Origin: Girardia tigrina
Lineage: Eukaryota
Direction: 5' to 3'
Length of the DNA: 63,325 nt
Assembly: GCA_001938485.1 (NCBI GenBank)
Contig: MQRK01221508.1
Location: 88,166-151,490 of the forward strand
Part shown: positions 16,101 to 61,250 of the stretch, piece after piece
Layout: every line of letters begins with the position of its first letter
Position numbering within the stretch: the stretch's first letter is position 1
Notes under the pieces: generated by a model
Databases searched by the model: none
What the model was told of the DNA's origin: nothing
The model's input: the letters and a program-made list of their open reading frames with translations, nothing else
Program-made: the position numbers and the translations under genes

Positions 16101-19100
16101 AAATAAATAACAAGTATTTTTTTGATTCCTTTAATTCAGCATCAGTTACAAGATCGAAATCACCAAAAAAATGTGTTCGCAACTTATTTTTGTCAATAAT
16201 GTACAATAGAGAAGCAACTGTATTCTAGGTTTACCTTTTAGCCTCAGTTGTAGAAGAATAATGTTCTTGTATTATATTCATACGAATATCCTCTGGGGTT
16301 ATATCTTTGATTAAATCATGCAAATCGTTCAGAGTATTCGACTGGCGAGACGACAACATCCATTTACGGTTGAAAATCAAAGGCTGTTTTAAAGTGTAAA
16401 CAATTTCTAAATTAAAAATGAGAATAAGTTGTTACTGAATTATTGTTTTATTTATAAACAATTTACTTTGATTAATTTGAAAGACAGCTGTAGCAATACT
16501 ATATGAACTGTATCCATACTTATTTTGAGCAATAATTCTAGCTATAAATTGTACTCCTTCTCCAAGGTCTTCCAATAAATAGCGATTGTCAACGCTGTAT
16601 CCAATAGTTTTCCAAGAGCTTGTGGAATCTAGATTCATAATAAAATGTTTTATCAACAGTTAGACTTCAAGTTATAAGAGCAGAGTACCAAACGCAACTA
16701 ATAGCATAAATACTTGAGGAGTCTTTAACAAAATTGGTAATAATTTTTTAAATATACGAATGGTTAGTACTAAGTTTCCAGATGCAGTATAATTTCAAAT
16801 TATCTATTAAGCATTACAACTTTTATAAATATTCATCCTTGCTGTCTATATAAAGTTGTATCCTTATAAATTAGTTAGTCCACACTGAATCGGGTAACCC
16901 TTTCATCAATTTTCTTTAAGCCTTGGCCGTCTTTTCTGGTCACGACGTAGAAAATCATCTGTCTAATGAGTTTTTCATTTGAACACACAAAGAAGTCGCA
17001 GGAGGAGACGTACTGACTGAAATATTGGATTAGTTCCTCGTTGTGCTATCTGGCCAGAAAACATATCACAACATACTACATTCTTCCAATCCAAGTCCTT
17101 AATTGATATCTGGAAATGGTCCAAGGCAACTACATATGCTACATTAGTCACACCTGGAAACTTATTTCTTTTCTCTCATATATACACATTTAACTATTTA
17201 TTATAAATATTACTCCCAAGTAAATTATTTTCAAAATTATATTTTTTAAAAGTAAAAAGATTATAACGGCAAAAAAAACAATAGCTAAAAAATATTTATT
17301 GGATTAATCTGGGTGGACAGGAAGCCGTGTCTCCAGAATATTTTGGAAAGAAAAGAATTATTTTTCATTGTGCATGTCGGTTGACAAGTGCTTTTCATTT
17401 TATTGAACAAAATATTCATCGGAAATCCATCTCGTTTACGCAATTCAAATGTGGCGATATCCCAACCGAGAAAATGATGACACGCATCTTTATTTGCCGG
17501 GAAAACTTCGAGTGATAGCGCACTCTTTATCGATGTTATAATGAATTCAGACATCAATTTTAAATTGGCTGAACAAATGACTTTCAGTTGTTCATCTTTA
17601 TATTGGCCTTTAACTTCTTGACCAAATTTTTCCCACATTTTTATTATTTTTGTCAATTTATTTTTTTTAAATCGCCGTAAAATTATTTATAAATTTCGAT
17701 TAACTGAACTCTTCTTTTTATTTAAATTGAATTAAGAGAACTCCCTTTTGAAAAACTTTTATTTGACATTAAAAACATTAAAATGACTTTTCAAAAAATT
17801 GATTTAAAAAATTGAAATTGTTATTATAATTCACAAAAATAACTTTTTACACACACATAACAAACAGACCAATCATTTTACATATCATACACAATACATA
17901 TCACATATTAACACACATTCATGCAGACAATTCATTCATACAACACAAGCATACTTACATGCAGAGAAAATCTGTTTATTGCAATTAAAATAAAAATAAA
18001 ATGAATGAGGCTCACAATTTGATTCAAATATCTCTTTTCGAATTTTTTGAGAACCCATGAATACATTTAAAGATTCGGGATTGGAATTTTTGAAATATGC
18101 CAAAATAAATTGTGTAACTCATTATTAAATCAGTATTTGGATCATTTTGCTAATTTAATTTTTATTTTAATATATTTTATTTAAATTATTTAATTTATTT
18201 AATTTTTTTTCTTTAATTGGTTAATTAAAAATATGATTTATTTAATTATTTTAATTTCTGAAACTGGCAAAAATGTTCGGTCAAATTGGCAATTCTCCGC
18301 TCCACTGGGTTAATATTAGGTTGGTCGAAAAATAATGGCGGTTTTTGAGCTTTATACTTTGTTTATCTACTTTGATATGTATATAAGTTTAAATGAATTA
18401 GTGTTAGATATTATTTGAAATCTTATGTCTAGCTGTATATTCCTAGAGCCATTATTAACATATTGCTGTTATTTTTTAGAATATTTACGGTGCTAAATTA
18501 ATAATGGACAAAATTAAAATTCGAGCAATTTTCTTGTACGAATTTAAACTGGGTCGTAAAGCAGCNNNNNNNNNNNNNNNNNNNNNNNNNNNNNNNNNNN
18601 NNNNNNNNNNNNNNNAGCAATTTTCTTGTACGAATTTAAACTGGGTCGTAAAGCAGCAGAAACGGCTCGCAATATCAATAAAGCGTTTGGCAAGGGAACA
18701 GTTTCTGAGCGCACAGTGCAACGATGGTTCCGAAGATTTTCCGATGGAGATGAAAACCTTGAAGATGAAGAAGGTCGTGGTCGTCCAGTTGCTGTGAACA
18801 ACGACAATTTGAGGACAATGGTGGAAACAGATCCCCGTGCAACAACCAGAGAACTTGCAGATGGGTTGGGCATTAGTCATTCAACAGTCCTGGATCATTT
18901 AAAACAACTTGGAAAAATCAAGAAACTTGATAAATGGGTTCCACATGATTTGAATGAAAGTCAAAAGAACCAACGCTATGAAATTTGTTCTGCCAATCAT
19001 CTTCGCCATAAAAACGATCCATTTCTTGATCGTATTGTTACCTGTGATGAGAAATGGATTCTGTATGATAACCGACGTCGATCTGCACAGTGATTGGACA

Positions 19101-34725: not shown

Positions 34726-37700
34726 CAAATAATAGTACTTACTTTTCGTAAACCAAAACTAAATATTGATCTGCCATGGAAATTGCATCGAATATTTCCA
34801 CAATATTTCTATTATTTATATTTTGAATGCACAGGAATTCCGAATTTCCAACTCCTATGTTATTAACATCGAAAAACTTTCCTATAAATTCACATTCTGT
34901 TGATTTTTCAATTAATATTTGGCAAGTACTGTAGGATCCTCTGAAATAAAATGTTTGATAATCTTGTTATTGTTTTTTACATCATCAGAATTGAAAATCA
35001 CAATACAAAACAAACGAAAACCAACTTGGTCAACTTCCTCATTGTATAATATCTATCATTGATATCTCCTTCATTGATCTGTACAGATTTTCGTTCTGGT
35101 TGAGCTAGAAAAACGTTAATGGTATTGAAAGGAAGGTTTTACGAATAGTAAATTTACCATCAATTCTCAAATTAAACTTGATTTCAGCGAACCCCGCCGC
35201 ATTTTCAGCTCTTATGCTATATTCTCCACTGTCCGACAAAATACATTTAGAAATCAGTAAGGAATATATTCCAGTTTCTTTATTTTCGGAAATAACGGTT
35301 CGATAACTGGAAAACATTTTTTTCCAATTTCGTCTCCAAACAACTTCCGGTGGCGGTTGTGCATCTATTTGAATGGAAATAAACAAATTCTCATGAAGGT
35401 TTAAACTTCTGTTTGGAAGACAATTCAAAAATGTTGGTGCATCTATAAAATTAACGTTCAGAAAAACAAATGTTTGAGTTATCAATATAAACCTGATTTA
35501 ATAAGAATAAAAGATTGTATGACCTCTTGAGAATTGTTTAGAGCACAATATTCTCCAAAATCTTCAGCTTCGAGATTTTTAACAACGAAATATATACCAT
35601 AGGATTCAGCAGAGTAAATTTTGTACTTTTCTAAAATATTTTTAAAAATGAAAAATAATAAAACTGTATTTCTTTAAGATTCTTTACCATTTATAGACAT
35701 TTAAAAAACATTAAATAAATTTGGGATAAAATAATATAAAATATTACTCTTTAAGTTCTAATTGCAAGTTATATCAATCTTTGAATTCATAATAACAGAA
35801 TTAAATAATTTTTTTACAAACAAATTTCTACTTTCTATGAAAAATCAATTTGTCGATATTTATTTTATTAATAATCTTTTATTCTTAAATCCTGATTAAT
35901 TTTTTAAAACTCAAAATTAAAAATGTTTAATTAATCGGATTTTAATTTAAACTAATATATTCTACCATAATATTAGGTTGTTCGATATGAAACGGGTCAA
36001 AATTAAAGTAAAATGTAAATCGATTTTTTTTAAATAATAACATTTTATTTTTAATCAAAATATCCCCCCATGTTGTCAACACANNNNNNNNNNNNNNNNN
36101 NNNNNNNNNNNNNNNNNNNNNNNNNNNNNNNNNNNNNNNNNNNNNNNNNNNNNNNNNNNNNNNNNNNNNNNNNNNNNNNNNNNNNNNNNNNNNNNNNNNN
36201 NNNNNNNNNNNNNNNNNNNNNNNNNNNNNNNNNNNNNNNNNNNNNNNNNNNNNNNNNNNNNNNNNNNNNNNNNNNNNNNNNNNNNNNNNNNNNNNNNNNN
36301 NNNNNNNNNNNNNNNNNNNNNNNNNNNNNNNNNNNNNNNNNNNNNNNNNNNNNNNNNNNNNNNNNNNNNNNNNNNNNNNNNNNNNNNNNNNNNNNNNNNN
36401 NNNNNNNNNNNNNNNNNNNNNNNNNNNNNNNNNNNNNNNNNNNNNNNNNNNNNNNNNNNNNNNNNNNNNNNNNNNNNNNNNNNNNNNNNNNNNNNNNNNN
36501 NNNNNNNNNNNNNNNNNNNNNNNNNNNNNNNNNNNNNNNNNNNNNNNNNNNNNNNNNNNNNNNNNNNNNNNNNNNNNNNNNNNNNNNNNNNNNNNNNNNN
36601 NNNNNNNNNNNNNNNNNNNNNNNNNNNNNNNNNNNNNNNNNNNNNNNNNNNNNNNNNNNNNNNNNNNNNNNNNNNNNNNNNNNNNNNNNNNNNNNNNNNN
36701 NNNNNNNNNNNNNNNNNNNNNNNNNNNNNNNNNNNNNNNNNNNNNNNNNNNNNNNNNNNNNNNNNNNNNNNNNNNNNNNNNNNNNNNNNNNNNNNNNNNN
36801 NNNNNNNNNNNNNNNNNNNNNNNNNNNNNNNNNNNNNNNNNNNNNNNNNNNNNNNNNNNNNNNNNNNNNNNNNNNNNNNNNNNNNNNNNNNNNNNNNNNN
36901 NNNNNNNNNNNNNNNNNNNNNNNNNNNNNNNNNNNNNNNNNNNNNNNNNNNNNNNNNNNNNNNNNNNNNNNNNNNNNNNNNNNNNNNNNNNNNNNNNNNN
37001 NNNNNNNNNNNNNNNNNNNNNNNNNNATCTGTCAAGAAATACCTTATTTATTTTCATACGATAGTTCAAAGTTAAGTTATACGCGATTGAAATGTAAGGT
37101 GTGAAGTTTGACCCGTTTCATATCGAACAACCTAATATTTAGTTTACAACTATAAAAAATATTTAATAAATTATAATCTTTTAATTTCAAATTATTCAAA
37201 TCAATTAAAATATTAAAAATTATTTAAAAGCTCAAAATTATTATTTTTAAAAATTATATATTTCATAAATTATAATTTATTTCAATTGTATTAAGAAAAT
37301 TTATTTCCGAATTTAATTTAAAATATTCGTATACAAAATTTATATTTTAAAATTTAAGCGTTTTTTAAGTTTTTAAATTATTTAAATTATTATTAGTGAA
37401 ATGAATATTAACTAATTCATAACAGCAGGGGTCTCCAAACTTTTAATGCATTTTGGATGGAGCGTTTGAAGATAGTCCTGCGGGTCACATATATAAATTA
37501 TGGTATTAAAAACGCATAATCAGTGAATACACAGATAAATTATACGTTTATTAATAATATGAACATATAAAATTATAATTGTAATTACATTATAGTGCAA
37601 ATTTTGATAATATATTCAAAACAATAACATTAAATTCCATTTAATAAATATTTCTAAAAAATTGGACGATTAACAGGAGTTCTAACTAGTGAGAATAGTG

Positions 37701-38941: not shown

Positions 38942-41900
38942 CAATTTAATATAAAAATAACAATTTAATAAAAAAAAATCATATATTAATAAAATATTAT
39001 TAATAAAATATAAACATAAAATAAAAAAAACAATATTAATGTGTCGAATTAAAAAATTTGTATCGAATTGTCTTGTGTCGAATTGTCTGGCTACCTTACT
39101 TAACACAGCATACTTTAATTAAAACATATCTGTGATAATATTTCAGTTTAATAAAATAAATATTCGCTTCTTCTTCAGAAAATATGTTTTAACGTTTTTT
39201 ACCGCATTTGTTTTAACATTTGGCTATTTTGTAATACTTAATTTTTGATTCAACATATTTTCTGACAGAAGTACAAAAAATTGTTTCGGGATTTTAAGAA
39301 AACATGAAAAATGAAATTTAAAAATGAATACTAAAATGAATTTTATTTTGATTTATTCAATCAACAGCCTACTTGCTCTGCTTTTTGTAATTTGAGATTT
39401 TATGTTGGAGTTATAGAGATATAAGTTAGTAATATTTTTTGCACTCAGTCAATCTTCATTATTATTTCTATTCGTCTCTTCTCCTGCCCAAAGGCAATCT
39501 TTCAACTAAGATGGTGAAGAGGTACTGATCATACAGCTTACAAGTAGATGAACGATTTCTAATTTTACAGAAAAAAATGTACACAATGAAGAGATGAACA
39601 GGAGACCACGATAAATTGGTTTAGAAAATAAAATTTAAAGCAAAATAAATAGAAAGCAATGAATGAACAACTTGCGAATGCCTTAAACGTCAGCTTACAA
39701 ACAATACATAGCCCGCATTTTTGATTTTGTGCCCACTATTGGATGTGACCACATTTTTAATTTTTAGATAAATGTTTTAATTCGGTCATATTTTAGTCAT
39801 TTTCCTTGCAGTGCCTTTTAAATCTTTTGAAAGTTTGCTTCTTTCTTTCAAAACACAAACTCTAATCATATTATACCTATTTGCGATTTAAGACCAGAAT
39901 TAGGGTCCATAAATTTTGAAGGTCCGAGTCAAAAATAAGTTGTTAAATTGAAAAAAATATATTCAAATTTTTTCTAGGAAAAATTAATCATAGTTACACA
40001 CTCCTCAATAATAATTGTAAATTATACGGCTTCTGTTTGATTATTATTCACTTACAAAATTTATGATTTGGCTACCAGAAGTCGAATATGCATTACATTT
40101 TCAGAAAATTTATAAAGACACGTATGTAGGCCCATAAGGGTTTATTCATGAAATGTAATAGAAATAAAATATTTCAGTTTTGTATTAAAATGGTGAATAT
40201 AATCACCTTGATATGTAAATATAACACTCATTACCATTAATGTTAGGAATATTTGTACAAAGATTAGAACGTTTATTTAGTTTATAAATGTAATTCAAGT
40301 AAGCCTATACTGAATGTTTTCCAAAATTCTGGAAATCGAAAACCAATGAGAGTAATGTAAATAAAAAATTTTAGGATAAATATTTATTTAACTTTATGAT
40401 TTCCATCTCAATTCCTCAACGAACAGATTCACAAATTATTTCCACTTTTCCTTCAGAGATACATTAAGTTGTTTGAACTTTATGGTAAGGACGGGGTGTT
40501 AAATTTAAAAAACTAATATCGTTATATTTATTATTAATTCAATCAAATAAAAGTTAATCTTACCAGGATATTTCATTTTATTTTCAATGAACATGTTCTT
40601 TTGATAATCTACTTCAAACGATTAAAAAATATAAATAAATTACTTAGATATTACCATGATTTCGGATACGTTTAGTAATCATTGATGGTTTACCCCTTCC
40701 AAAATCTGTAACTGGCACAATTCTTAATTGATAATTCATATTCGGATCCAATTCAGATATATCAACGCGATTTTTTTTAATATTCTGCTTGAGAACAATC
40801 CAGTCATCGTTGTTTGCGTCTGCCATACTCATCTCACGGTATTGAACATCAACTGAGAATGGAGTATAAAGATCTGAAGACATTCTCGGAGGTGTCCATG
40901 ATAATATAGACTCCATCTTCCCATTCGTTCCAGGAATCACGATATCCTCCATATTCAAACGAACAAATGAGAAATCCGGTATGGCTGAATGTTTAATAAT
41001 TATAAAACAAATCAAAACAAAATTTTCACTTAATGATAAAAATAACTTTTACTTTATTACCTTCTTTTAAACTTAAAGGTTGTCCAAATAAATGTAGTTA
41101 ACGTAAATCATAAAATATATATTTCTCTAACTACGAATTTTCAATTTATGTGTTCCGGAATGGAATAATAAAAAATAATTAATATTAAAGAATAAAATTT
41201 TAAATTAATTGTAAATTATTGTAAAAATTTGTATTAAAAAATTACAAACTTTTTCGTGTAAATGTAGAAAGTTCTTTTTAATGTTTATCGAAATAGTTGC
41301 TTAGCAACTTTTGTTTAATAATAAGAAAAAAATTTGAATATTCAGATTCTATTTTGAAGTGCGACTTTTTGTTTTGGTGGTATAAATTCTGAATTGACAA
41401 TTTCGACAAAATTATTTTGAGGAAAATTATTGCATTTTAAATTCTGTTACTACGTGTTGCTGAATATTAGTTTCGGTAATTCGAGTATGGTGATAAACAT
41501 CAAATTCAATCTTCTACTACAAGATCTGATTTATTCTTTCGACAAGAACATCGATTTCTACAACAATAATCTCCAGCATTTCAATTTAGATGGAATTTTC
41601 GGAATGAGCATAGAAAATTACGCTAACCTAAAAACAAACCTAATTTAAATGTTGGAGCGGAAATTAGCCGATTTGACCAAACATTTTTACCAGTTTCAGG
41701 AAAATATAAATAAAATATATAATTAAATTAATAAATTAAAATAATTAAATAAATTTATCAAATAAAATAAATTAAATAAATAATTAAATATAAAACAATA
41801 AATAAAATTAAAAATTGGCTCTCTTTCTTTCTTTTATTAATTATTTTCCAAATTTATCAGTCACATTTACAATAGACTTAATTTGTATTTTCTTTTCATT

Positions 41901-44900
41901 GTCTTTTATGAATTCTCTTTGTTGGATTTGCAGATGAGAGTGAAAATAATTTTACTGAGCAAGAAGAGGCAACATTATATAAGTTAAAACACATTATCAA
42001 TCGATAATGTGAATATAATATAATTAATTGAATGGTGAGCCTCATCTTTGCATGTTAATCTTTCTGCTTTGTAATTACATGATGGTGTGTGTGTCTGGAT
42101 TGCGTGTGTGTGAAAATGTTATATGTATATAAGTGAGTGTGAATGCACGTGTGTTTATGTTATGTCCAATAGGACAAAAATGTAAAATAAATAAATCTAA
42201 TTTGTTGGTAAATGTATGTAAGGTATGCGAGTGTGTGTGTGTAGCCAGAGAATTGTTGTTATGAGCATTTGTCAGAAATTTGAATGAAAGTTGGAAAAAA
42301 AAGTTGAATTTTGAGTTGTATTAAAAATTTAAAAGAACAAATAAAATATTTCAAATTGGAAAATAATTTTTTGTCTTCATTTTCAATTCCACGAAAACTT
42401 AAAAATGATCTTGCTGACAAATTTAAAAATAAACGATGCCATGGTGTTAGCGGCTTCAATGCAAGAAGATGAAAAGATTAAAAGTTTAAATAATCATCAA
42501 AATCAGGTGAAACCATTGTTTAAGAAAATGACTAATTTATATTATTCAATTTCTTCCATAGAAAGTGATCTATATATGTTTCATGATTTAATTGATAGAG
42601 AAATTTGTTGTATCATCTTAACTAAAAAGGAATTTTCTAAAAAAGTGGCATTTGCATTTTTGATTGTTATTATAGGTGAATTTCATAATAAATATGGCAG
42701 TAAATTTGAAATTGCATCGAGACCGTATGCATTTATTGAGTTCGATAAAGATATTCAAAATTCACAAAATAAATATACAGTCACCCGAACACCAATAACT
42801 TTTACTCAAATTAATTCTAATTTAAACGTTCAAAGAATTATAGTGAAAAACATTAACGATGTAATTCAACGAGGAGAATCTCTGAGTGATTTAGATGATG
42901 AATCGACAGACAGTTCTTCTCTTTCCAAAACATGGAGACACGGCTTCCTGTCCAAATGTGTTGAATGAATAAACATTTAAAATCAATTAAAATTTTATAA
43001 ATTATTTGAATTAAAATATTAATTAACTGTCAATAATAATTAAAATTAAATATAAAAAAAATATTCTGTTGAGTACTGTCATTATAAAATATTCAATCAA
43101 ATTCCTTAGTTAAATAAGTTTAAAATAAATAATTTTATTTCATTAAAATGTCTTACTAATTTGAGGATGTAATTTGACTATTTGTGAAGGTATTCCTGAA
43201 CCAAATTGATTTGAGGCAATTATTCTGAACATATATTCTTGGCTCGGATCAGGACTTTCCCAATGGAAGGAGTTTTCCTCTAAACCGGATATCAATTCTA
43301 TCCAATTCAATCGTTTAATGTCTTTTGAACGGTTTTTTATATTATCATTAGAACTAAGAACAACGTATTGAACTTCGTATTGCATGTCTATCAAAAGTGC
43401 AGACGGTATACAAATTTCATTACTTTCCGGCGAGAATCCCGACTGCAAGTCAGGCTCTGTCCATTCTATAACAAAATCCGTAACTGAATCCGAGATGAGT
43501 TTCGGTTTCATCAAAGACATGTCTGGAACAAGAAGATCTGAACCGAAAATGATTTAATGAGCCTTTTATGAAGTACTATAAAAATTATATATAATGTAAG
43601 CGCTAGTTCATATTACAATCATATTTAAAATAAATTACTAATCTGTCTAAAATATACATATTTGTATCTAATTTCTATTCAATTATAATTGCGATTTTCC
43701 CATAATAAACGGTAATCTTGTAAAAATAAAGGTCCAATGTCATATATAAACGTTATCGTCATTTTAAATAATATAAATATATTTTAAATATAATTATAAT
43801 AAGTAACAACGAATTTCAGTAAAATATTACATTAAAGAAATAAAGGTTTTGGGAAATTAATAAAGACTTGTTTCATAGATAATTGTACTTTTCATATGTT
43901 AATAAAATACAACTTTTGGTTTCATCCTTAACTTAAAGAATATTTGATTTTTTTTATTTTTCTTTTTCTCATAATCTTAATCGTATTAAAAAGAAATACT
44001 AAGTTTAGACTAAGATTACCAAAACAAAATTAACGGGATGATTGGGACACAGTTGAATCTGACCTTTATTTTGAGTTTGGAATTGATGTATTTTATTGAC
44101 AATAAAAAGAAGATTAATTTGATTGTTCATTTTCAAAATGATCGATTTTGTCAAATAGAACACATGAAATATGCGATTTATTTCAATTGTTCTTCAAGAC
44201 TCCAGTCTACAAGGACAAAAAATTGGTCATTTAAGCAAAATTTTCAATTCAATTTTCCCGTTGACCATTAAAGAGGAGAGGGAGGAAATCTCGCAAAATG
44301 TAACTTATTTTTCCCGTGGAGGGGGCCCCCTATAGGTTGGTGGGGCTCATTTTTGTCATCCAAAAACTGAAAAGAACACTAAATGTGTTACATAAGCATT
44401 CTTTCAGTTTACTTAAGGATTTTATTTTAAAAAATCACCAATTTTTCGAAATTTATTTACAATCTTTAAATAAATGATTTAATAATATTTAAAATTATTT
44501 TGTGCTTGCAAAAGTTCTTATGCTTTTTCAATGTGTTTTGTATCAATTCAAGAGTTTTTTCTGTCCATATCTTCGTCTATTATAGAAGGTACCTGTTTCT
44601 TTGAAATGGTCTAGAAATACGGAGACTTTTACACAATTAACACTAAAAAATTTACCCACATCATATATATTGATAATTCTCTAATTTCATCCGAATACCA
44701 AACTGCTGGTATGAAACTTTTATTATTAAAATATTTAACAAGATAAATAATTTCAATTATTTATATGCTATTCAATATAAAAATTTCAGAAATAAACATT
44801 GCGAGGAGTTGGTTTAAATTTGCATTTCGCCTGTGAGGAATATTTTGAATGTTTGATGTTTTGTGTTTGAATGTGTATGTTGATTTGGAAATGTGTCTCT

Positions 44901-47900
44901 CCTACTCAGATGGATGATTAATGTTTTAATTCTTATTATATAAAAATAAGTAATGTTTAAATTTATTTTTAATTTCATATAATTTTAAAATTTTAAATAA
45001 GTTAATTAAGTTTTATAATATTTAATAAATAAATCAAATTAATATTTTTTAAATAATTAATTATCATTTTAATTATTATCCAATAAGTTTTGAGTGAATA
45101 TTTTATTTAAATATTTATTTCCCCATTTTCTAAAAAAGTAATGAGAATTAAACCATTAATCAATTTTCTCTTTGAATGCAAATATACGAAAGTTTTGACA
45201 AAGATTGTTTTGAGGACAATCAAAATTGTTGCTTAAATAAAAATATAAAAAATCAAATTGGTGTTCTTAATATCGCCAAAATAGTTTATTACTTTTTTAA
45301 TTTAAAAGTATTAAAAAAAATAAAAAATCAAAAGTTTTAAAATTAAAAATGATATTATAAAGAAAACTATCAAAATTTAAATGCTTATATAAAAATAAAA
45401 AAAATTTACAGTTATAAAAATTGATATATTTTTTAAAAAGTTTTGAAATAAAAATTTTTAAATAAATAATAAACGGATTAAACTTTATAATATTTTAAGA
45501 AATAATTTTTTAAATGACAGGTTTATGTTAAATTTAAATTAACCCATTAATACCGAGAATTATGTAATATGAATTTTTCATAATGCCTGGTGACAGAGAA
45601 ACAAAACATATTCCGTATGTGTTCTGAACCTTCAGAGTACACACCTTATCAACGAAACATAGCTAAATTCAATGTATTTACTTTTACAGCCATTTTTATT
45701 AGCTGGGCACGAATGTTCCCGTTCGGCGTTAATGAGTTTTAATGAGTTAAGGATAATGAGTTTTAGGATAAAATTTTATAAAAATTTTTATTTATAAATT
45801 AAAATTTAATTTTATTGATTTAAAGTTTGAAAATTTAAAAGTTACGAAATTTTACAAATTGAATAGAAGAACATTTTAATAGATTGATGTTGGCGGAATA
45901 ATTGAATTAACAAGATATTTGTTTAATTACGTGAATTATTGTCATTAATAAAATTTTGGTGTTAAATTATGAATATTGAATCTAGTGATAATGTGGCATA
46001 AAAGCTACTTGCACACATTATTTAAATATGGTCATAAATTTACTCGGCATATGAGAAATATTTTAAATTGTGTATTAATGTGGAGTGTTGATTTATGTGT
46101 GCTGAAATTGGAATTGTGATTCTTCAAACCAGTTGGAAAATTGGTTCTTCAATGTCTTTATCTTAACTTATCATTCGAACAATATTGAAATTTTTAATAA
46201 TTCGATAAAATTTAATTTTAAAAAGTAATAAGTTATCATAAATCTTAAATTTTTGTAATCTGTTTCAAATTTTTAAATGAACATGTTTAATATATTAATT
46301 AAAGACATTATGGAGGTTTTAATTAATTTTACAATAAATTTGATTTAGTTTTTATAATTTAATGAAATATTTTTCAAATAAATTAAAACATAAACTACGT
46401 AATTTTGTAATGTAATTGTATTAAAAAAATTTTTATCTAGATTTTTTTATTTAAAATCAAATTTAAATAAAATAATATTGAAATTAAAAACGTAAAATTG
46501 ATGATGACATTAATTGAAATTATAAGAAATGTTTTAACAATAATTGCACCAGAGCATACGGCACATCATAGTATTCCAGTTATATGGATCAAGGATTTTC
46601 TACAGTATCGTTGACCAGTGACATGAATCAAGGTGAAAAGTTACATTTCAAGGGTACGAGATCTACAGAGACCTGAAACAATGGAAAAATAAGGTAATGT
46701 AGAAGCAAGTGTGCGATTCCATAGTGTCGAGATTCGAAGTCTCAGTGGCTGTTGGTCTGCCGGGTGATGAGTGATTAAAACGGCTTCCTCTGATAAGTCG
46801 ACCAATCAAAGCCAGTCTTGTCAGAGACACAAAATATAAAAGTAATTAAAATCACTTTTTAAATTCTTTTGTGTGATTACTATATTTTTTGCTTCGATTT
46901 TTTTGAATCGCAAAATTTGTTGAAATCAATTATTTTTTTATGTATCAATTTTAAAATAAAACGAATTTATTTTTATAAAACTAAAATTTGTTTTTCATGA
47001 TTTTAGGAATTTTTGTTTTTATATTTTTGTAAAAATGAAGATTGAAAAACGATTTGAATTATTTTCTGCGATTGTAAAACGAATAATAAAAACTACTTGA
47101 AGCTTTTATAAGATAATAAATAAATGAATTTTGTTATAAAACTTTGAGTTCTTTTGATTTGATATGATATCAACAATCAAAATACTTTTACTTGAGTAAA
47201 ATAATGATCTTCTGAACAATATTTTAAAGTGAACCATGCATGAAATGCCTGAGCTTCAAATCCTTTGCATCTCTGCTACTACCGGTCAGTCTCTGGGGAA
47301 ACCTGGGGACTGTACCAAACATAATTGTGTGAAAACAACCACTAAATGTAAAACTCAACAATTATTTTATTTTAATAAAATGTCCCCTTAAGTTCTTTGA
47401 TTTTTTAAAAGTTTTATCCCGCATAAGGATCGTTGATAAAAATCAGTATATGCTAAAGAAGATAAAATTAATTTAAGTTACACAGTATAAGAATTATATT
47501 AATAAAGGCTATATGAAACTTGGTTATATTCTACGATATTCATATACTTTAGAAAATGCTTTAAATATAAATTAAAAAAAATACCAAAATAAAATAGTAT
47601 AAAAACCTTTTGATATAAAAATTCTGAATATTCGACTTGGACTCAGTTTCTCTCCGTTATAAAAGGGTTGGATTCGGAAAAGACTCTCTTGAAACGTAAT
47701 TGGAATTATTATTGAATTACCAAATACTTTGGCCGAAGTTTCCGTCCAGTTAGACGTCTCTTTAGCAAATTTCTTTTCGATTTGAAAACTTAATTCATCG
47801 GCACTTATATCATTATCGAAAATAGATTCGCAAAGGTGCCATTTGATCTCGATTTCCTCACAGTTTATGACAAAGTATCGAATGGATTTAATAACTTGTT

Positions 47901-50900
47901 CATTTGATAAAACGTTTATCAATGAATGCATGGAAACCTCTTTACTGGGCCCACTGAAACTCAGAGCATTTTTTGCCAACACTCGATAAGTTGTCACTCC
48001 AAACTTATCGATTTTTGAATTTTTGAAGCTACATTTTTCTAACTTTTCAACAAGGGTGAACCAGTACTGGTGACCAGTTTTACATTGTAAAGTGTACGAT
48101 ATTGGACAATCAATAAGTTTATGACATGTGGATTCTGACCATTTTATTTCATGGTATCCGTTGAGATCGAAAACTTGAACATTTTCTGGAGTTGTTGGAA
48201 TGCATTCGTTTTTAGATGGAATAGTCACAATATTATAACCATCGTGAAAGTCACTTTTATTTTCCTCTAAGGCTAAAATTTTTAGTTGACGAGAAAAATT
48301 CTCTGATAGAGGTAATTCTAAAAAGCAATCTTCCCCAAAAATTATTGATTGAACTTGATCCCAATCTGAATTATAAAAATTTTTCTTTTGAATAATATAT
48401 TTATTATTTTTGTCCGGTAACCACGGATCCCATTTTAGATTTAATCCATCGCATGAAAGAGACACTATTTCTGCAGATTTCAGAGTATCATAAGTAATTA
48501 TATTTCTTGTTTTCTCTACTGATGGCGAACGGGTAGACGGTTTACTAACTATGTTAGCTTGAAGTCGGTAGCTTCTTGTAGGTCCATTTTGTCCAAACTT
48601 ATTCCGACAGCTCACTCGAAACTCCTGTGCAGCTTCAATTATATTTTGAGTTAGATAAACCTTACTTTCAGTAATATTTTCTTGATAGATTTTCCATGGT
48701 GAAAGTCTTCCGTTTCTATATTCAACCTTATAGTCAGGAGCAATTCCAGGAACACAAGATTCACAATATTCTGGTACGATTGCAGCACGCCATTTTAAAC
48801 ATGGTTGACCTTTGACATGAAGCCATGGTGGTTCAAGTGAAAAATCTGGTACTAATTTCAAACGATCTAATCTAGATATTAAACTTTGACTTGGTTCACT
48901 TATTCCATAATCATTAAATGCAGTAACCCGAAACATGTAAGAAACTCCTGGTTCCAGAGGCATTGAATATTCATTGTTTGTTAACTCATTACTCACGATT
49001 TGCCAACTACTTTTGGGATTATCTTTCATTTCTAAACAATAAAACACTTTACCAATGCTTTCTTCAATACTTAAATCTTTGCATCTTCCTCTGGACCATG
49101 AAAGTTTTGCACATGTTGCATCTTTAAAAACTATAGTGGGTTTATCAGAAAGTAATATTGGAGCACTGGCTCTAATCGGGATTTCGATAACATTCGATAT
49201 AGTGTCGAATCCATATTCACTAGTCGCCACACATCTTAAAGTATGGGGCTCGTTAAGTGAAAGGTATAAAGATGACAATGAGCAGGTTGTGTTGGTAAGA
49301 TTTTTTAAAATTTTCTTCCATTTTGTAGAAGTTAAAGACTTTTGTTTTTCTATACTATACGTAACATTTACACCATCTTTAATGGTAACACTGGTCCAAG
49401 ATAAAATGACATCAGCATTTTTGGAAAAATCAACTGTTAAAACTGGTTCACTCTGTGGCTTAACTGTAACAACGCAATTAAATGCGCAAAAAACTTTTAA
49501 AAAAATCTTACCTAATATAAGATTCGAATTATCCTCGAATTTATCATCTTTATCGTCATTTTCTAAAATCAAATATTAATATGGTTTAAAGGTTAATTCA
49601 TATTAATACAAAATTAAAATTGATAATCAAAAATATGCTTAGTTTTAATATATTTCTAGTTAAATGTATTACAAAGTTAAGAAATAAATAAATATGTTAT
49701 TATAATTATTTAAATTAAAATATTATATTTATTTAGCTTATGACTAATTCAATTATTGCTACTCAAAAAGTATTGATATCAATCAACTTGTTAATCACGT
49801 CTCATTGGAAAATACAAACCATATTAGTAATTACGTCCTCTTTACTTTTTCAGACCCACTCTTTTTTCTTTACCTTTCAATTTTGTGGTTAAAAATATCA
49901 CACCCTTCATAAATATGTCAAAGAATATGATTTGTTAATTTCAAATTCCTTTCTTTGTACAAAAATTAAAATCCAAAAAAGAAAAGAGAGCACATCTTTC
50001 TATTTTTCGAAGATTTGTAGCTTCTGCTCTGCAATATCGGCCCACAATGATAATACTAAAAAGATTCTTAGTTTAATAAGAAACTCAATGGTCCCACGAA
50101 AGAGACAGGTTACTTATTCAACTTAAAACATTTAAAACATTTTGATTGCTCGAAGTTTTATTCAAATTGTTTATTTAACAAACAGCTGTTATCCGAAATT
50201 CAGGTAACATATAATATACATTATTTATAAAGTAGAAATGTATTGTTGACTGAACTCCTATACCTCTTATATTAGATTTTGTACTATTTCTTATTAAAAT
50301 TTATTATTGTTTTCGTATATTTTGTGCGCTGTTTGTTTTCTTTTTCATGGATTTTTACCAAAATACACAATTTTGAAAAATGAAATGTAGTAACACATTC
50401 ATTAGTCTTTGTTTCATTGATATTGTAAGGTCTATTTTACTTTAATTTTCTTATTTATTTTTATTAAAATATTACTTTGAAAATTGTTAATGGTTCTTTT
50501 TAAAAAAATTCTCATAAATTTTTTGAAATATTTTTTTTTCACTTAATAATATAAAAATTCAAATTATCTCAGAAAACAGGAAGATTGAACAAACACAGTT
50601 GATCAACAACGTTTTTAGAAAAGATTGTAGTTAAAATTCATGAATAGAAATATATAAGACTTAAATAATAATAATTCTAAAATTTAAAATAAAAACAAGT
50701 AAATTAAACATGAAAAATCAGGTTTATATTAAATGAGTGATTTTATCACGAATTATCATCATACATCGATTTATTATGACTTACTTATGTTTTCTTACTA
50801 ATTAATCCATTAATTGGGAAATATTGGGAAACAATTTATCAGGAATGAATAAAGAGGTAAGATTTTAAGTCTATTCAATAATGAAAAGTTGGAGAAATGA

Positions 50901-53900
50901 TGGCTAAAAGATTTGTAGCAAACAGACAAAGTGAATGAAGTCTAATAGTAGTAAACATCAGGCTCATTCAGATCGTAATCATTTAGTCAGTAAATTTAAA
51001 CGACAAACAGCGAAATTTCTAATCTTCAAATCAACTATACCAGAATCACTTAAACCCTTTGAATATCGAACTTTTTTGATAAAAATTGTCTAGAATGCAA
51101 AATAAATCTCAATAAATCTCATATAATATTCAAGTTCATGTTTATTCATTTTATGGGAACCATATGCAATTAATCTTTCTCTTCCACACATGTCTTTCCT
51201 CCTATTGTATCAAAACTTGCGTCTGTATCGAGTGTAAAGTCTTTAGAAAAAACCGGGTATGACAAAATTGGTGTCTTAATCATTTTTTCTTTTAATTTTT
51301 GAAAAGCTGCATCACATTCTTCAGTTCAAATCAGTTTTTTATCCTTTCTCTTACCACATAAGCCTTTTCAAACCTTTGCATATCTAGCGTAATCCTTTAT
51401 GAATTTCCTGTAGTAATTCGTCAAACCTAAAAAGCATCTTAAATATTTGATACATGACGGGTTTTGAAATTTTCTAATCGCATCAATCTTTATTTTATCT
51501 ATCTCAATACCTTTTTTACTTATAACAAATCCTAAAAATTAATTTTTTTCTACTAGGAATTGACATTTCTCTGGATTTATTCTCAATTCTTTAATTTTCT
51601 CAAATACTTTATGTATTCTTTGAAGATGTTCTTCTTTATCTTTTGCAACAATCAAAATATCATCTAAATATACGACTGCTTCTTTCAAATTCAAATCTCA
51701 CAGAACTTTCACCACTAATTCTTGAAAATTTACTGGAGCCGCTGCAATTCCAAAAGGCATTCTCTTAAAACAATATTGAACATTCTTTGTTGAAACGCTG
51801 TTTTAATCTTTGATTCTTCTTCAACCTGATAGTATGCATTTCCTAGATCGAATGTACTAAAATATTTTGCTCCATTCAACGTGTTTAACATGTCATCCAT
51901 ATTTGGCATAGAAAATGCCGGTCTTACCGTATTTTTATTCAACTGTCGAAAATCGACACATACTCGGATGTCTTTTTTCTCTTTTTTCCATACACACACC
52001 AGAGGAAAGTTCCATGGAGAACTACACTTTTCAATTATACAGTTTTCTTTAAAATTTCTAATAACATCATTTAGTTTCTCTTCAAAATGTTGTGGTAGTC
52101 AATAAGGCTTCACTAAGACTTATTCTTCACGAGTTTCCATTTTGTGTTTCGTTAAGGAAATTTTCCCAACATCCAACTTGTCAGCCATGAATATTGATTT
52201 ATATTCTGTTAAGTCTCATTAGTTCGTTGTCAACTTTGGTATTATATATTTCTTTAATTCTCTTTAGTCTGTCATCATCTGTTGGACGATCTCTAATCAT
52301 CCATATATCACCTGAATCTATAGTTTCCTTCTTTAGTTTTATTCCAAATTTGTCCAAAAAGTCAACTCCTGCTATCATTTCTGGGTTGAGTTCTTTGACT
52401 ACATAAAACTCTATAATTTTTTGTACTCCTTCAATTATTACTTTTAATTTAACAATTCCAAAATGTATAAGGCCTGAGTCATTTGCACAATGAATGGGTT
52501 TACTCGTTTTCTTTATCTTAACATCTTTCATACTTTTAAGTATATTTGATTTAATAACATTTACTTTCGCACTGATATCCAAAAGACATTCAGCATTCAT
52601 ATTATTGTTATTAAATTCAATGCTTGACCTTTGATATTTTCAACATTTCTTCCTGTTTCAACTTTTTCGATTTTTTTATCTACTTATCAAAACAGTTTGT
52701 GTCAAATTCTTCCTTCTAACAATCTAATTCACAAACTTCGAGAGGGATATCTTCCAACGCACAATCACACATACAGTCATACATACCATTAAATACACAA
52801 TCACATACACAAACATTTTTACTTTTTAGTGAAGCATACTGATCACCTCTCCTTGTGATCGTGCATCCTCGTTTCCCTGGTCTTTATCGTATACTTGTCT
52901 ATTATATGTAAACATTCTTTGCCTCGAGTCTCATTTATTTGATTGTGTTTCTTCGTATTCGTTGTAATCGTCGCCATCATGCATTTTTGCAATATGATAT
53001 CTTTGATTTTGATGCCTCTATTGATGTCGTGGGTTATTTGCTCTAGTCCATTCATTTTTTCTGGCGTATTGGTCTCTTTCTCTAAATCTATGCTTGTTCA
53101 TGTAGCATTGCTTCCTGATATGGCCATTTCTTTAGCAAAAAGAACACTTTATATTCGGACAGTTTCTTCTTATGTGTCCTTCTTCGTGCATGCCCAGCAT
53201 TTTACAACTTTTGAATAGTTATTTCTCAGTTTTTATTCATTATTTCTTTGACTAGTGTACCTATTTTCGAAATTTCTTTGTTGGGTTCGTTCTTTATAGT
53301 GTGGTTTACGTTAGCCTACCGTTTTCCATTCATTATGTTTACCTACTATTTTGTATGCGTTTCTTCTTTTTCCATTTTTCAATATTCTATTTTCATGTCA
53401 AGACCACTCAGAAATTTTATCCATGTTTGAAACTGTGGTGTAATAGGGTTTTTCGTAGTCATCATAAAAGTGATAGCTTTATGATCCGTTCGTAACAAAA
53501 ATCTTTTCCCATACAAAAAATGTTTAAAATGTTGAGTGAAATAATAAATTGCAAGCAGTTCTTTCCTTGTTATGCAATATCAGCATAACGTTCGAAATTT
53601 TTTTATGAAGTCACCTAATTTCGACTCGGTTCCATCGAATTTTTCGTGTCCTATAATGTTCATTGTCACATGAGCAGTGGTCGCCATATTAACAACATCA
53701 AAATGAGTTTTTAAACATTTATTATTATCAAAAACGCCTTCACTATTTAACACTTTTTTTGATCAATATATTTCTGAATTCAATCTAATTATTTTCAATA
53801 AATTAAAATCTTTTAATAAAAATTATTAATTATAAAGAATCTAATTCGTTAAAATTAAATCTAAACATTTTTAAAAAAGTACATATTAAATTAATATATT

Positions 53901-59615: not shown

Positions 59616-59855
59616 CTGCAAAAATAAATGACATTAAAATAATTACGTATGATGCAATGAAGACATCATGAATCATAGGAAAAATGAACAAATGAAAACC
59701 CTATTTATGTATATCTTTCAAGTTGACAAACAATAAGGAAATTGTATTTTGTTCTTTTTAATAATTTAATGCTTTACTCAATTTCTTTAAAAATATGTTC
59801 ATTAATTTTCTGTGGTAAAATAGTTTTTTAAAAAAAAGAATAAAAAAATAAAATG

Positions 59856-60756
59856 TGGAGTGGAAATTAATCGTTTGACTGAACATTTGCCAGTTTGAAA
59901 AAAATTATTATAAATAAATTAAACAAATATTTTGCCATTTAAATAAATAATTAAAAGAGAGTAAAAAAGTTTTAAACAAATAAAATAAAGTAAATTAAAT
60001 AATTAAGTAAATAAGATTAAATTAAAATAAGTAAAAAGAAATTAAAAATTAAATAACCAGTTAAATTAACGAATTAAATAAATTAAAATAAATAATAACC
60101 AGTATATTTTTGATGTTTGAGTGAGCTGAATTTTGTTTGAAATGTGTTATTGAGAATTCTCTTACAAAAACAACACGACAACCTCTCGCTGATCTCATCA
60201 ACTATTTCTTAATCAATTCTGCAACTGTAGAAATATATCGATTACAATTCGAATAATGGTAAGTGATAATCAGGTAATTGAAATGTGTGAGTTTTTGAAT
60301 TGACCAATGAATTTGAAGTCATTATTGCGTGTGTCTGTTATATGTTTGTGTGTGTAATTGGAATTAAAGAGAATGGTTGGTTGAAGTGTACGTGCTTGTG
60401 TGTCTTTGTAATTGATTAAATGATCAAGATCACAATTAAAAAAAAGTTTATTTAAATGAGATAAAACAATGTTTAAAAAATAAATCGGTTCGTTTTTGGG
60501 AAAATTTCGAGTTCAATTATTGTGCGAAGGAAGTTTGTAAAATTAATGCAAATAAAATGTGTAAAAAGTGTTCAATGTTATGTTTCATCATAATAAAAAT
60601 ATTTTTTTATATTCTGTATCAATTCGTCAACTAATCAAAAAATATTATAAAAATGATTAAATCTCCTTACAACTCTTTGATAAATAATAATCCAGTAAAT
60701 GAAATTGTTTCGAATTATCCGATTAATTCAAATGTGGAGGCACGATTTCCTATCCA
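59856..60756 (+). mobile_element. Cargo-bearing TG...CA element, copy 3 (decayed Cys-rich cargo)
   Basis: Ends TGGAGTGGAAATT...TTTGACTGAACATTTGCCAGTTT and TGGAGGCACGATTTCCTATCCA; 5-bp TSD aaatg at 59851-59855 and 60757-60761. Confidence 0.82.
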
Positions 60757-61250
60757 AAATGTTTTATTTTAAATTAAAAAAAATTTTCTTTACATATTGC
60801 TTTTTGGAAGAACAGATGAGGTAACCTCAAAAAATTTAGATAAAATCTTATCTTTTCTTAATGTGGCTCATTGTATTAAACAGATGTCCAGACTAAAGAT
60901 ATTCTTGGAGATATTTTATCATAAAGGTTCAATCAAGTGTTCTTTAAAAATAATTGTTCTTAATTCAACAAATTTTTAACTCGGATATGCAATTAGTTAG
61001 CAGATTGAATTATAGAACAGGATAGAAGCAACTCTGTTTAGCTTGAAAAGTTCCAACGATACTGACTAGTTTCTTAACTGGTAAAATCAATATATAAGGG
61101 ATTCAAGTAAGACAATATGTTTCAAGAAAACAATCTCATTACCAGATGTACAATGTACATCATTTATTTAAATAGTATATTATACAGAAACACAATAATT
61201 AAAGAACATTAAACCAATAAATTATCGGATTAAAATATATGTTTAATTTA

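What the first reader, a model, noticed from the sequence alone, without database searches (positions are those of the whole stretch)
41653..42954. Mobile element family with conserved ends and interchangeable captured cargo genes
Seen: three elements (17314-18304 minus, 991 bp; 41653-42954 plus, 1302 bp; 59856-60756 plus, 901 bp) share a 5' end TGGAG(C/T)GGA...TTTGAC..AACATTT..CCAGTTT, an AT-rich tract, a GTGAG donor-like site (GTGAGCCTCAT in copies 1 and 2) followed by a TG-rich tract, and a 22-nt 3' end TGGAG(A/G)CACG..TTCCT(G/A)TCCA. Each has its own perfect 5-bp TSD (ctggg, aatgt, aaatg), so they are independent insertions. The slot before the 3' end holds unrelated sequence in each: an unknown 123-aa ORF, SEC22, and a Cys-rich remnant. 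Known: TG...CA ends with 5-bp TSDs are the signature of retroviral-type integrases (Gypsy/BEL LTRs; Ginger-type DNA transposons use a related enzyme). Inference: these are either solo LTRs of a retroelement that captures host mRNAs inside its LTR, or a Pack-type non-autonomous element working as a promoter-intron-cargo cassette. Three copies in 63 kb suggest a genome-wide gene-shuffling system.
Basis: partly seen in the sequence, partly recalled or inferred. Interest (0 to 1): 0.92.

Follow-up and report, generated by a model that had tools for sequence, protein, structure and literature searches.

The report
LTR-like repeats carrying captured host genes
Three roughly 1-kb mobile repeats in this AT-rich animal genome, most likely long terminal repeats of one retrovirus-like transposon lineage, carry the front ends of different host genes (SEC22, an RNA-polymerase subunit, an ankyrin protein) in one slot, showing one element family repeatedly copying and spreading host coding sequence.

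Summary
Three units (17314-18304 minus, 41653-42954 plus, 59856-60756 plus) share a 47-bp 5' end and a 22-nt 3' end. Each starts TG, ends CA, and has its own perfect 5-bp target duplication. I found five more copies in public metagenome and SRA contigs, all at different sites.

The 5' two-thirds of the unit is diverged but homologous in all copies. The last third is a slot whose content differs between copies:
- SEC22 from residue 1 to about 180;
- an unknown ORF;
- an ankyrin-repeat piece fused to the tail of that unknown ORF;
- the first 40 residues of RPB10 fused in frame ahead of SEC22.

Where the parent is recognisable, the captured piece is the 5' part of an mRNA. Newer pieces lie 5' of remnants of older ones. 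The same cargo recurs at several loci, so it travelled with the element.

My best reading (about 0.55) is solo LTRs whose 3' part captured host mRNAs when reverse transcriptase switched templates. This is a variant of the known LTR-mediated retroposition. No full-length element was seen, so a self-contained unit moved in trans is not excluded. The proposed splice donor, the expression cassette and a genome-wide system remain untested. The organism was not identified.

The parts
17314..18304 (-). Unit c1 (991 bp), whole element, TG...CA
   Evidence: 80% identical over 621 bp to public contig L008
18258..18304 (-). c1 conserved 5' end (47 bp)
17825..18015 (-). c1 GTGAGCCTC motif (18007-18015) followed by TG-rich tract
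17285..17638 (-). c1 cargo ORF (117 aa from its ATG). It reads in frame through the 3' motif as WRHGFLS and stops 9 codons into the flank. No known family. Its last ~45 aa are shared with the ankyrin-carrying copy P0019
17314..17335 (-). c1 3' terminal motif (22 nt)
17309..17313 (.). c1 target-site duplication (ctggg); second copy at 18305-18309
41653..42954 (+). Unit c2 (1302 bp), whole element; lies antisense in an intron of a minus-strand Ig/FN3 gene
41653..41699 (+). c2 conserved 5' end (47 bp)
41706..41816 (+). c2 AT-rich tract of degenerate short tandem units
42035..42250 (+). c2 GTGAGCCTC motif (42035-42043) followed by TG-rich tract
42405..42968 (+). c2 cargo ORF: SEC22 residues 1 to about 180 (longin domain plus half of the SNARE domain, no membrane anchor), uninterrupted. 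It reads in frame through the 3' motif and stops 4 codons into the flank
42933..42954 (+). c2 3' terminal motif (22 nt)
41648..41652 (.). c2 target-site duplication (aatgt); second copy at 42955-42959
59856..60756 (+). Unit c3 (901 bp), the most diverged member, with no recognisable cargo
60259..60414 (+). c3 GTAAGT at the position of the GTGAGCCTC motif, followed by TG-rich tract
60735..60756 (+). c3 3' terminal motif (22 nt, 3 differences from c1/c2)
59851..59855 (.). c3 target-site duplication (aaatg); second copy at 60757-60761

Best explanation
The three units are copies, most likely solo copies, of the long terminal repeat of one retrovirus-like (LTR) retrotransposon lineage in an AT-rich animal genome. 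The 5' two-thirds is the fast-evolving regulatory part of the repeat. It holds the 47-bp end, an AT-rich tract, a weakly conserved stretch ending in the GTGAGCCTC motif, a TG-rich tract, a small conserved block and an A/T-rich leader. The 3' third is a slot. During minus-strand DNA synthesis, reverse transcriptase starts just outside the 3' end of the repeat and first copies the 22-nt end. At that stage it has repeatedly jumped to a co-packaged host mRNA, copied it to or near its 5' end, and jumped back into the leader. Each jump put the front part of a host message, with its start codon, ahead of whatever remained of the previous cargo. The altered repeat was then copied and inserted again by the element's integrase, which makes TG...CA ends and 5-bp duplications. 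Shown: the family, its ends, the duplications, the different cargoes, their 5'-of-mRNA character for SEC22 and RPB10, the stacking order, and the same cargo at several loci. Inferred: that the unit is an LTR, that capture went through RNA, and the template-switch step.
For: TG...CA ends and exact 5-bp duplications in 3 of 3 window copies; a 5-bp duplication is the commonest LTR signature (text quoted). The inverted repeat at the ends does not exceed chance beyond TGGA...TCCA. The SEC22 cargo occurs in c2, L001, L002 and L003 with four different 3' flanks, and the c1-type cargo in c1 and L008, so cargo moved with the element. SEC22 starts at residue 1 and lacks its C-terminal 35 residues. RPB10 covers profile positions 2-40 of 58. 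All cargo ORFs are uninterrupted. Stacking: RPB10 lies ahead of SEC22 in L001. An ankyrin piece lies ahead of the last ~45 codons of the c1-type ORF in L009. c1-type copies keep about 8 codons resembling the SEC22 segment just before the 3' motif. The cargo-to-end part is better conserved than the 5' part: 93% against 79% for c1/L008, and 89% against 78% for c2/L003. From general knowledge, this is as expected if the 5' part is U3. Partial mRNA copies, chimeras of two genes and further rounds of retroposition are the published hallmarks of LTR-mediated retroposition (PMC5131818).
Against: No copy was seen as one of a pair flanking an internal gag-pol region. All eight 3' ends run into unrelated sequence and none into a shared primer-binding site. 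The window holds no matching internal region; its one gag-like ORF is unlinked. A slot this long before the 3' end implies an unusually long R-U5. The exon-intron structure of the parent genes is unknown, so the RNA origin of the cargo is inferred, not shown. Only 8 copies were available, and 5 of them were found through protein searches, which favours copies with open frames.
Confidence: 0.55

Rival explanations
1. The ~1-kb unit is itself the complete mobile element. It would be non-autonomous, with ends recognised in trans by a retroviral-type integrase or transposase encoded elsewhere. It is not half of an LTR pair. Cargo would still be gained by template switching, or by repair synthesis.
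For: Eight of eight copies show no shared sequence beyond the 3' end, and 3 of 3 window copies are single units with intact duplications. Cargo ORFs have no stop inside the unit and run to its last base.
Against: No known replication route makes a single LTR-like unit with defined TG...CA ends from RNA. Known integrase-related DNA transposons have 40-270-bp inverted repeats, and in animals 4-bp or 6-bp duplications, whereas these ends are not significantly inverted repeats. Solo LTRs commonly outnumber full elements, so 8 of 8 is not decisive: if 20% of copies were 5' LTRs, the chance of seeing none in 8 is about 0.17.
Confidence: 0.25
2. A Pack-type cut-and-paste DNA transposon of the Ginger/TDD kind that picks up pieces of genomic DNA.
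For: TG...CA ends with a 5-bp duplication also occur in the TDD-4 and TDD-5 elements. Gene fragments inside integrase-related DNA transposons are known.
Against: No long inverted repeats. The ends start TGGAG, not TGTNR. Animal Ginger2 elements make 4-bp duplications. Cargo is uninterrupted coding sequence that begins at the start codon, and newer pieces always lie on the 5' side. That directionality fits reverse transcription better than DNA repair.
Confidence: 0.08
3. The unit works as an expression cassette. A promoter in the AT-rich part would drive a short first exon, an intron would run from GTGAG through the TG-rich tract, and the cargo would be the expressed second exon, giving the host new chimeric genes.
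For: GTGAGCCTC, or GTAAGT in c3, is kept in all 8 copies at the same place. Cargo ORFs are open in 6 of 8 copies although about 5% of random changes would create a stop.
Against: No conserved acceptor site was found. The ATG before the motif is present in only 5 of 8 copies, and an in-frame stop lies just upstream of the c2 cargo ATG. dN/dS between copies is 0.5-1.6, so the cargo proteins show little or no constraint. The SEC22 piece lacks its membrane anchor, and one copy has decayed. No expression data are available.
Confidence: 0.1
4. The shared ends are chance similarities or belong to a host gene family, and nothing here is mobile.
For: None beyond the low complexity of the AT-rich and TG-rich tracts.
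Against: The motifs are absent from shuffles. There are three exact 5-bp duplications, and related copies lie at unrelated sites in five public contigs.
Confidence: 0.01

Closest known systems
LTR-mediated retroposition by microsimilarity-guided template switching (Tan et al. 2016, PMC5131818)
   Same: Partial copies of host mRNAs embedded in LTR-retrotransposon sequence, chimeras of two parental genes, and chimeras that retropose again as non-autonomous elements.
   Different: There the retrocopy replaces internal ORFs between two LTRs. Here it sits inside a single TG...CA unit, next to its 3' end. It is always the 5' part of the message, it is stacked layer on layer, and it is in frame with the last 7 codons of the unit.
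Bs1 of maize and gene fragments in maize LTR retrotransposons (cited)
   Same: An LTR retrotransposon carrying pieces of several cellular genes and amplifying them.
   Different: Those are plant elements with cargo between the LTRs. In the maize survey no single element held fragments of more than one gene, whereas L001 and L009 each hold at least two layers.
Gene transduction by retroviruses, giving fusion proteins of viral and host sequence (general knowledge; cited)
   Same: Capture of host mRNA sequence by recombination during reverse transcription, often in frame with an element ORF.
   Different: In retroviruses the host piece replaces internal genes and the virus becomes defective. Here the slot is in the terminal repeat, and no element ORF has been seen.
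Ty1 of yeast, whose gag ORF starts inside the 5' LTR (general knowledge; one search lists PMC5454406 on the 5' terminus of Ty1 RNA)
   Same: A reading frame that begins in the repeat and crosses its 3' boundary. This would explain open, stop-less ORFs that run through the 3' motif.
   Different: This is an analogy only. No downstream gag was found, and no sequence relation was tested.
Ginger1, Ginger2/TDD and GingerRoot integrase-related DNA transposons (PMC2836005, PMC6839031)
   Same: TG...CA-type ends; a 5-bp duplication in TDD-4 and TDD-5; GingerRoot carries gene fragments.
   Different: Those have 40-270-bp inverted repeats, TGTNR or TA ends, and 4-bp or 6-bp duplications in animals and plants. 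None of these features is met here.

Membership tests
LTR of an LTR retrotransposon (solo LTR) | 5'-TG...CA-3' termini | tested here: met
   All three window units, and the 3' ends of five public copies.
LTR of an LTR retrotransposon (solo LTR) | Target-site duplication of 4-6 bp, of one fixed length within a family | tested here: met
   Exact 5 bp in 3 of 3 units.
LTR of an LTR retrotransposon (solo LTR) | The same repeat occurs as a direct pair around a primer-binding site, gag-pol and a polypurine tract | tested here: inconclusive
   No pair in the window. Eight different 3' flanks. Scans of public collections found no further copies. The genome itself was not available.
LTR of an LTR retrotransposon (solo LTR) | U3-R-U5 organisation (transcript start and polyadenylation site inside the repeat) | not testable with these tools
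   Needs transcript-end data. AATAAA hexamers are too common at 27% GC to be informative.
LTR-mediated retroposition chimera (Tan et al. 2016) | Partial, intron-less copy of a host mRNA | tested here: inconclusive
   The copies are partial and uninterrupted, but the parent loci are unknown, so loss of introns cannot be shown.
LTR-mediated retroposition chimera (Tan et al. 2016) | [quoted passage not shown] | tested here: met
   RPB10 plus SEC22 in L001; ankyrin plus the c1-type tail in L009.
LTR-mediated retroposition chimera (Tan et al. 2016) | Microsimilarity at junctions | tested here: inconclusive
   SEC22-type and c1-type copies share about 25 similar bases just before the 3' motif. Without the parent sequences this cannot be told apart from a retained SEC22 remnant.
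LTR-mediated retroposition chimera (Tan et al. 2016) | Secondary rounds of retroposition of the chimera | tested here: met
   The same cargo sits at 4 loci (SEC22 type) and 2 loci (c1 type) with unrelated flanks.
Ginger/TDD-type integrase-related DNA transposon | Terminal inverted repeats of about 40-270 bp | tested here: not met
   End-to-end alignment scores are no better than random 26-mers (fraction at or above observed 0.12-0.50).
Ginger/TDD-type integrase-related DNA transposon | TGTNR termini, and 4-bp duplications in animals | tested here: not met
   The ends start TGGAG and the duplication is 5 bp.
LINE-mediated processed pseudogene | Poly(A) tail, duplications of variable length, 5' truncation | tested here: not met
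   No poly(A), a fixed 5-bp duplication, and cargo truncated at the 3' side, not the 5' side.

The most novel reading that the evidence does not exclude
The repeat is an LTR in which the element's first reading frame begins, as in yeast Ty1. Captured host N-terminal pieces would then be kept open and in frame because they are translated as leaders fused to the element's own first protein. That would make the LTR a self-propagating platform fusing host protein fronts to a retroelement protein, with a readable stratigraphy of successive captures. Hints: six of eight cargo ORFs read through the 3' motif in one frame (WRHGFLS) with no stop inside the unit. RPB10 and SEC22 are joined in frame. The large deletions in the SEC22 cargo leave the frame open. 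Differences within the 22-nt motif fall mostly at third codon positions, 5-6 of 8-9 by my count (binomial P of about 0.04-0.09). dN/dS near 1 shows that the cargo proteins themselves are not conserved.
Probability: 0.15. Interest if true: 0.85.

Novelty: new variant of a known kind. Interest (0 to 1): 0.6.

Why it matters
Retroelements are known to duplicate and shuffle host coding sequence, but usually as scattered one-off events between the LTRs. Here a single family shows at least four capture events at one defined slot next to the end of its terminal repeat. Captures always add to the 5' side, and the cargo then spreads to new loci. If this holds genome-wide, it is a natural record of reverse-transcriptase template switching, layer by layer. 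It is also a recurrent source of promoter-linked, start-codon-bearing gene fragments inserted into introns and near genes. For annotation there is a practical point: SEC22-like, RPB10-like and ankyrin-like ORFs in this genome, and in metagenome protein sets, can be element cargo rather than host genes.

Tried and rejected
1. Scans for the 3' motif in JGI metagenome contigs, IMG/VR and prokaryotic genome contigs gave only chance matches in GC-rich bacterial contigs, or nothing. Protein-guided scans of IMG/VR with the c1 and c2 ORFs also found nothing.
2. Organism identification failed. The 666-aa Ig/FN3 exon has no relatives in the length-limited search. The nearest SEC22 is an unnamed metaclust protein at 64% identity, and the best named hits (tunicate, flatworm, acoel, fishes) are at 40-47%. 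The sample identifiers occur in no searchable paper.
3. The parent of the ankyrin cargo was not found; only generic ankyrin repeats came back.
4. An AlphaFold model of the c1 ORF had mean pLDDT 31 and was unusable, so no fold search was run.
5. Rfam found nothing in c2 and only sub-threshold microRNA noise in the public copies. No tRNA genes are present in the window.
6. I considered a terminal inverted repeat with covarying positions. It is not above chance.
7. I considered the ATG-GTGAG junction as a start codon plus splice donor. The ATG is not conserved, no conserved acceptor exists, and no in-frame join is possible for c2. I also considered TGGTGAGCCTC as an internal primer-binding site; the TGG is absent in 3 of 8 copies.
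8. I considered the 47-bp 5' end as the tail of an ORF entering the repeat. By my reading, the c1/c2 differences are 2 synonymous and 4 non-synonymous, which gives no support.
9. I considered selection on the cargo proteins. dN/dS is 0.5-1.6.
Full report
**What is in the sequence**

The window has 27% GC and contains seven runs of N. I left these runs as they are. It comes from an animal genome. A large minus-strand gene has immunoglobulin I-set and fibronectin-III exons spread over at least 27 kb. The window also holds a mariner-type element, a Tc5/pogo fragment and a gag-like fragment.

- c1 at 17314-18304 (minus strand);
- c2 at 41653-42954 (plus strand);
- c3 at 59856-60756 (plus strand).

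Each begins TGGAG and ends TCCA. The 22-nt 3' motif occurs three times in the window, against none in 100 shuffles. A 15-nt core of the 5' end occurs three times against 0.19 expected. Each unit is bracketed by its own exact 5-bp repeat. A self-BLAST of the window connects the units only through their ends. No further copies or fragments are found in the window with up to three mismatches.

**More copies from public data**

The window's genome is not in the collections I could search. Protein searches with the two cargo ORFs recovered five short public contigs that carry the same kind of unit:

| Contig | Source | Cargo type |
|---|---|---|
| L001 | ENA metagenome assembly | RPB10 piece + SEC22 |
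| L002 | ENA metagenome assembly | SEC22 |
| L003 | Logan SRA assembly | SEC22 (decayed) |
| L008 | JGI metagenome | c1-type ORF |
| L009 | JGI metagenome | ankyrin piece + c1-type tail |

All five end in the 22-nt motif with zero to three differences and then run into unrelated sequence. In L001 the flank looks, by eye, like a hAT-type transposase fragment; I did not test this. None of these contigs reaches the 5' end of the unit. c1 and L008 are 80% identical over 621 bp, and c2 and L003 are 86% identical over 549 bp. These are therefore paralogous copies from the same or a closely related species.

**Anatomy of the unit**

With eight copies the layout is clearer than with three. In order, a unit contains:
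1. the 47-bp conserved 5' end;
2. an AT-rich tract of degenerate short tandem units, a kind of sequence also common elsewhere in the window;
3. a weakly conserved stretch that ends in the 9-mer GTGAGCCTC in seven copies and in GTAAGT in c3;
4. a TG-rich tract of about 150-250 bp;
5. a small conserved block containing CACAAT in most copies;
6. an A/T-rich leader of about 110-270 bp with recurring short motifs;
7. the variable slot;
8. the 22-nt 3' motif.

The answer is split. Parts 1-6 do align at 67-80% identity. The slot does not.

**The cargoes**

- **c2** encodes SEC22 from its first residue to about residue 180 of 216. That is the longin domain and the first half of the SNARE domain, without the membrane anchor.
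- **L001, L002 and L003** carry the same SEC22 copy with different deletions. L003 has decayed: I count five frameshifting indels, three in-frame indels and two stops.
- **L001** also has the first 40 or so residues of the RNA-polymerase subunit RPB10 (Pfam RNA_pol_N positions 2-40 of 58). This piece is fused in frame directly ahead of the SEC22 start codon.
- **c1 and L008** carry a 108-codon ORF with no known relatives. Structure prediction of this ORF failed, with a mean pLDDT of 31.
- **L009** carries about 200 residues with ankyrin repeats, fused in frame to the last 45 or so codons of the c1-type ORF.
- **c3** has no recognisable cargo. Its longest ORFs are 41 aa or less, so the 'Cys-rich remnant' is not supported.

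The c1 and c2 ORFs resemble each other only in a 16-residue tail.

**Three regularities**

1. Where the parent is recognisable (SEC22 and RPB10), the captured piece is the 5' part of the message. It includes the start codon and a short leader and is cut off at its 3' side. This is the opposite of LINE-made pseudogenes.
2. Newer pieces lie 5' of remnants of older ones. RPB10 lies ahead of SEC22. The ankyrin piece lies ahead of the c1-type tail. The c1-type copies keep, just before the 3' motif, about eight codons that resemble the SEC22 segment at the same place in the SEC22-type copies and in the full-length SEC22 protein P0001. I read this as a layer sequence with SEC22 first, the c1-type ORF second and the ankyrin piece third. 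The alternative is a long microsimilarity that guided the SEC22 junction. This cannot be excluded without the parent genes.
3. The same cargo sits at several unrelated loci, so it was carried along in later insertions.

**Reading frames and constraint**

In c1, c2, L001, L002, L008 and L009 the cargo ORF reads through the 3' motif in one frame. It translates as WRHGFLS (WGHGILS in L002), has no stop inside the unit, and stops at random a few codons into the flank.

Between copies, dN/dS is 0.5-1.6, so the cargo proteins are under little or no constraint. About 5% of random single-base changes would make a stop. For the 64 differences between c2 and L001, the chance that both stay open is about 0.04, by my calculation. 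This is only a hint, because five of the eight copies were found through protein searches.

The cargo-to-end segment is better conserved than the TG-rich tract and leader: 93% against 79% for c1/L008 and 89% against 78% for c2/L003.

**Interpretation**

TG...CA ends with a fixed 5-bp duplication point to a retroviral-type integrase. The ends are not significant inverted repeats beyond TGGA...TCCA. They do not start TGTNR. Animal Ginger elements make 4-bp duplications and carry 50-180-bp inverted repeats, and GingerRoot makes 6-bp duplications with 100-150-bp inverted repeats. A cut-and-paste integrase-related transposon is therefore a poor fit.

The directional, 5'-of-mRNA, stacked pattern is what reverse transcription predicts if it begins just beyond the 3' end of the unit, where the tRNA primer of an LTR element sits. 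The first bases copied are the 3' motif and whatever lies next to it. A jump to a co-packaged host mRNA, a run to its 5' end and a jump back into the leader would replace the upstream part of the old cargo and keep its 3' remnant.

This is the published mechanism of LTR-mediated retroposition: partial copies, multi-gene chimeras and secondary retroposition (PMC5131818). The difference is where it acts. Here it acts inside the terminal repeat and not between the repeats. I therefore rate 'solo LTRs of a retroelement whose R-U5 part is a capture slot' at about 0.55.

**What weakens it**

No unit is seen as one of a pair. No internal region, primer-binding site or polypurine tract has been seen. 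All eight 3' flanks differ. If a fifth of copies were 5' LTRs, seeing none in eight has a probability of about 0.17, so this is not decisive. It does keep alive the reading that the 1-kb unit is a complete non-autonomous element moved in trans (0.25).

The proposed splice donor is conserved as a motif. However, the ATG in front of it is not conserved, and I found no conserved acceptor. Rfam finds nothing there. The promoter-intron-cargo cassette is therefore untested and not supported. The claim of a genome-wide system cannot be judged from 63 kb plus five stray contigs.

**Comparison and novelty**

Gene capture by LTR retrotransposons is known: Bs1 and about 189 captures in maize, and the survey across animals. 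What appears unusual here is the fixed slot inside a single TG...CA unit, the serial 5' stacking, and the stop-less frame crossing the 3' boundary.

The most novel reading not excluded is that the element's first ORF starts in the LTR, as in yeast Ty1 (general knowledge). The cargo would then be translated as an in-frame leader. I put this at 0.15. I could not identify the organism, and I could not check curated repeat libraries, so the family may already be catalogued under some name. I file it as a new variant of a known kind.

The exons of the Ig/FN3 host gene were searched one by one by reference. The putative first-exon-to-cargo splice was not modelled by joining.
- The degenerate patterns used for scans were written from the window's own copies.
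- I filled in no N run.
- These were spliced leaders, a retroviral primer-binding site, and C-terminal residues of human SEC22B and of RPB10.

Noticed in passing
window 18313-19696: A mariner-type DNA transposon with perfect 33-bp inverted ends (18313-18345 and 19664-19696) and HTH_48 plus DDE ORFs. The transposase is interrupted by one in-frame stop and the element holds an assembly gap. Its TA duplication lies 1 bp from the target duplication of c1, so the two insertions are almost adjacent.
   Followed up: partly
window 59102-59216 (minus): A 5S rRNA match just above the Rfam threshold (40.3 against 38 bits), about 640 bp upstream of c3. It could be a 5S gene, a pseudogene or a 5S-derived repeat. 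Some LTR elements target Pol III genes, but one case says nothing.
   Followed up: no
window 22824-49572 (minus): A large Ig/FN3 cell-surface-type gene with long introns (exons at 22827-23351, 35108-35485, 40647-41015, 43146-43520, 47575-49572). c2 lies antisense in one intron. The 666-aa exon found no relatives at E <= 1e-5 in the length-limited search.
   Followed up: partly
window 6316-6741, 14142-14371, 44818-45030, 53687-53901 + 55639-55837: A separate repeat family of about 430 bp with four copies at 70-92% identity. The last copy is split by an insert of about 1.7 kb that has its own ORFs.
   Followed up: no
window 9369-9701 and 10116-10247: A pair of inverted repeats at 93-96% identity beside the 50-N gap at 9491-9540. 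It is either a foldback-type element or an assembly artefact.
   Followed up: no
window 29107-29724 (minus); 52202-52600 (minus); 62104-62544 (minus): An isolated gag-like ORF (Retrotrans_gag, 7e-5), a weak retro-peptidase match and a Tc5/pogo DNA-binding fragment. None is linked to the c1-c3 family by sequence or position.
   Followed up: partly
L009 about 1425-1435: The 9-mer GAGCCTCAT, part of the conserved internal motif of the units, recurs about 130 nt beyond the 3' end of the L009 copy. It may be chance (about 0.003) or a neighbouring related element.
   Followed up: no
L008 954-983: The contig ends in what looks like a sequencing-adapter sequence, so this public metagenome contig is not clean at its 3' end.
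   Followed up: no
L003 1-480: In the Logan copy, the region upstream of the unit is about 50% GC and unrelated to the AT-rich 5' part of c2. This copy is therefore 5'-truncated or rearranged. It has no open frame.
   Followed up: partly
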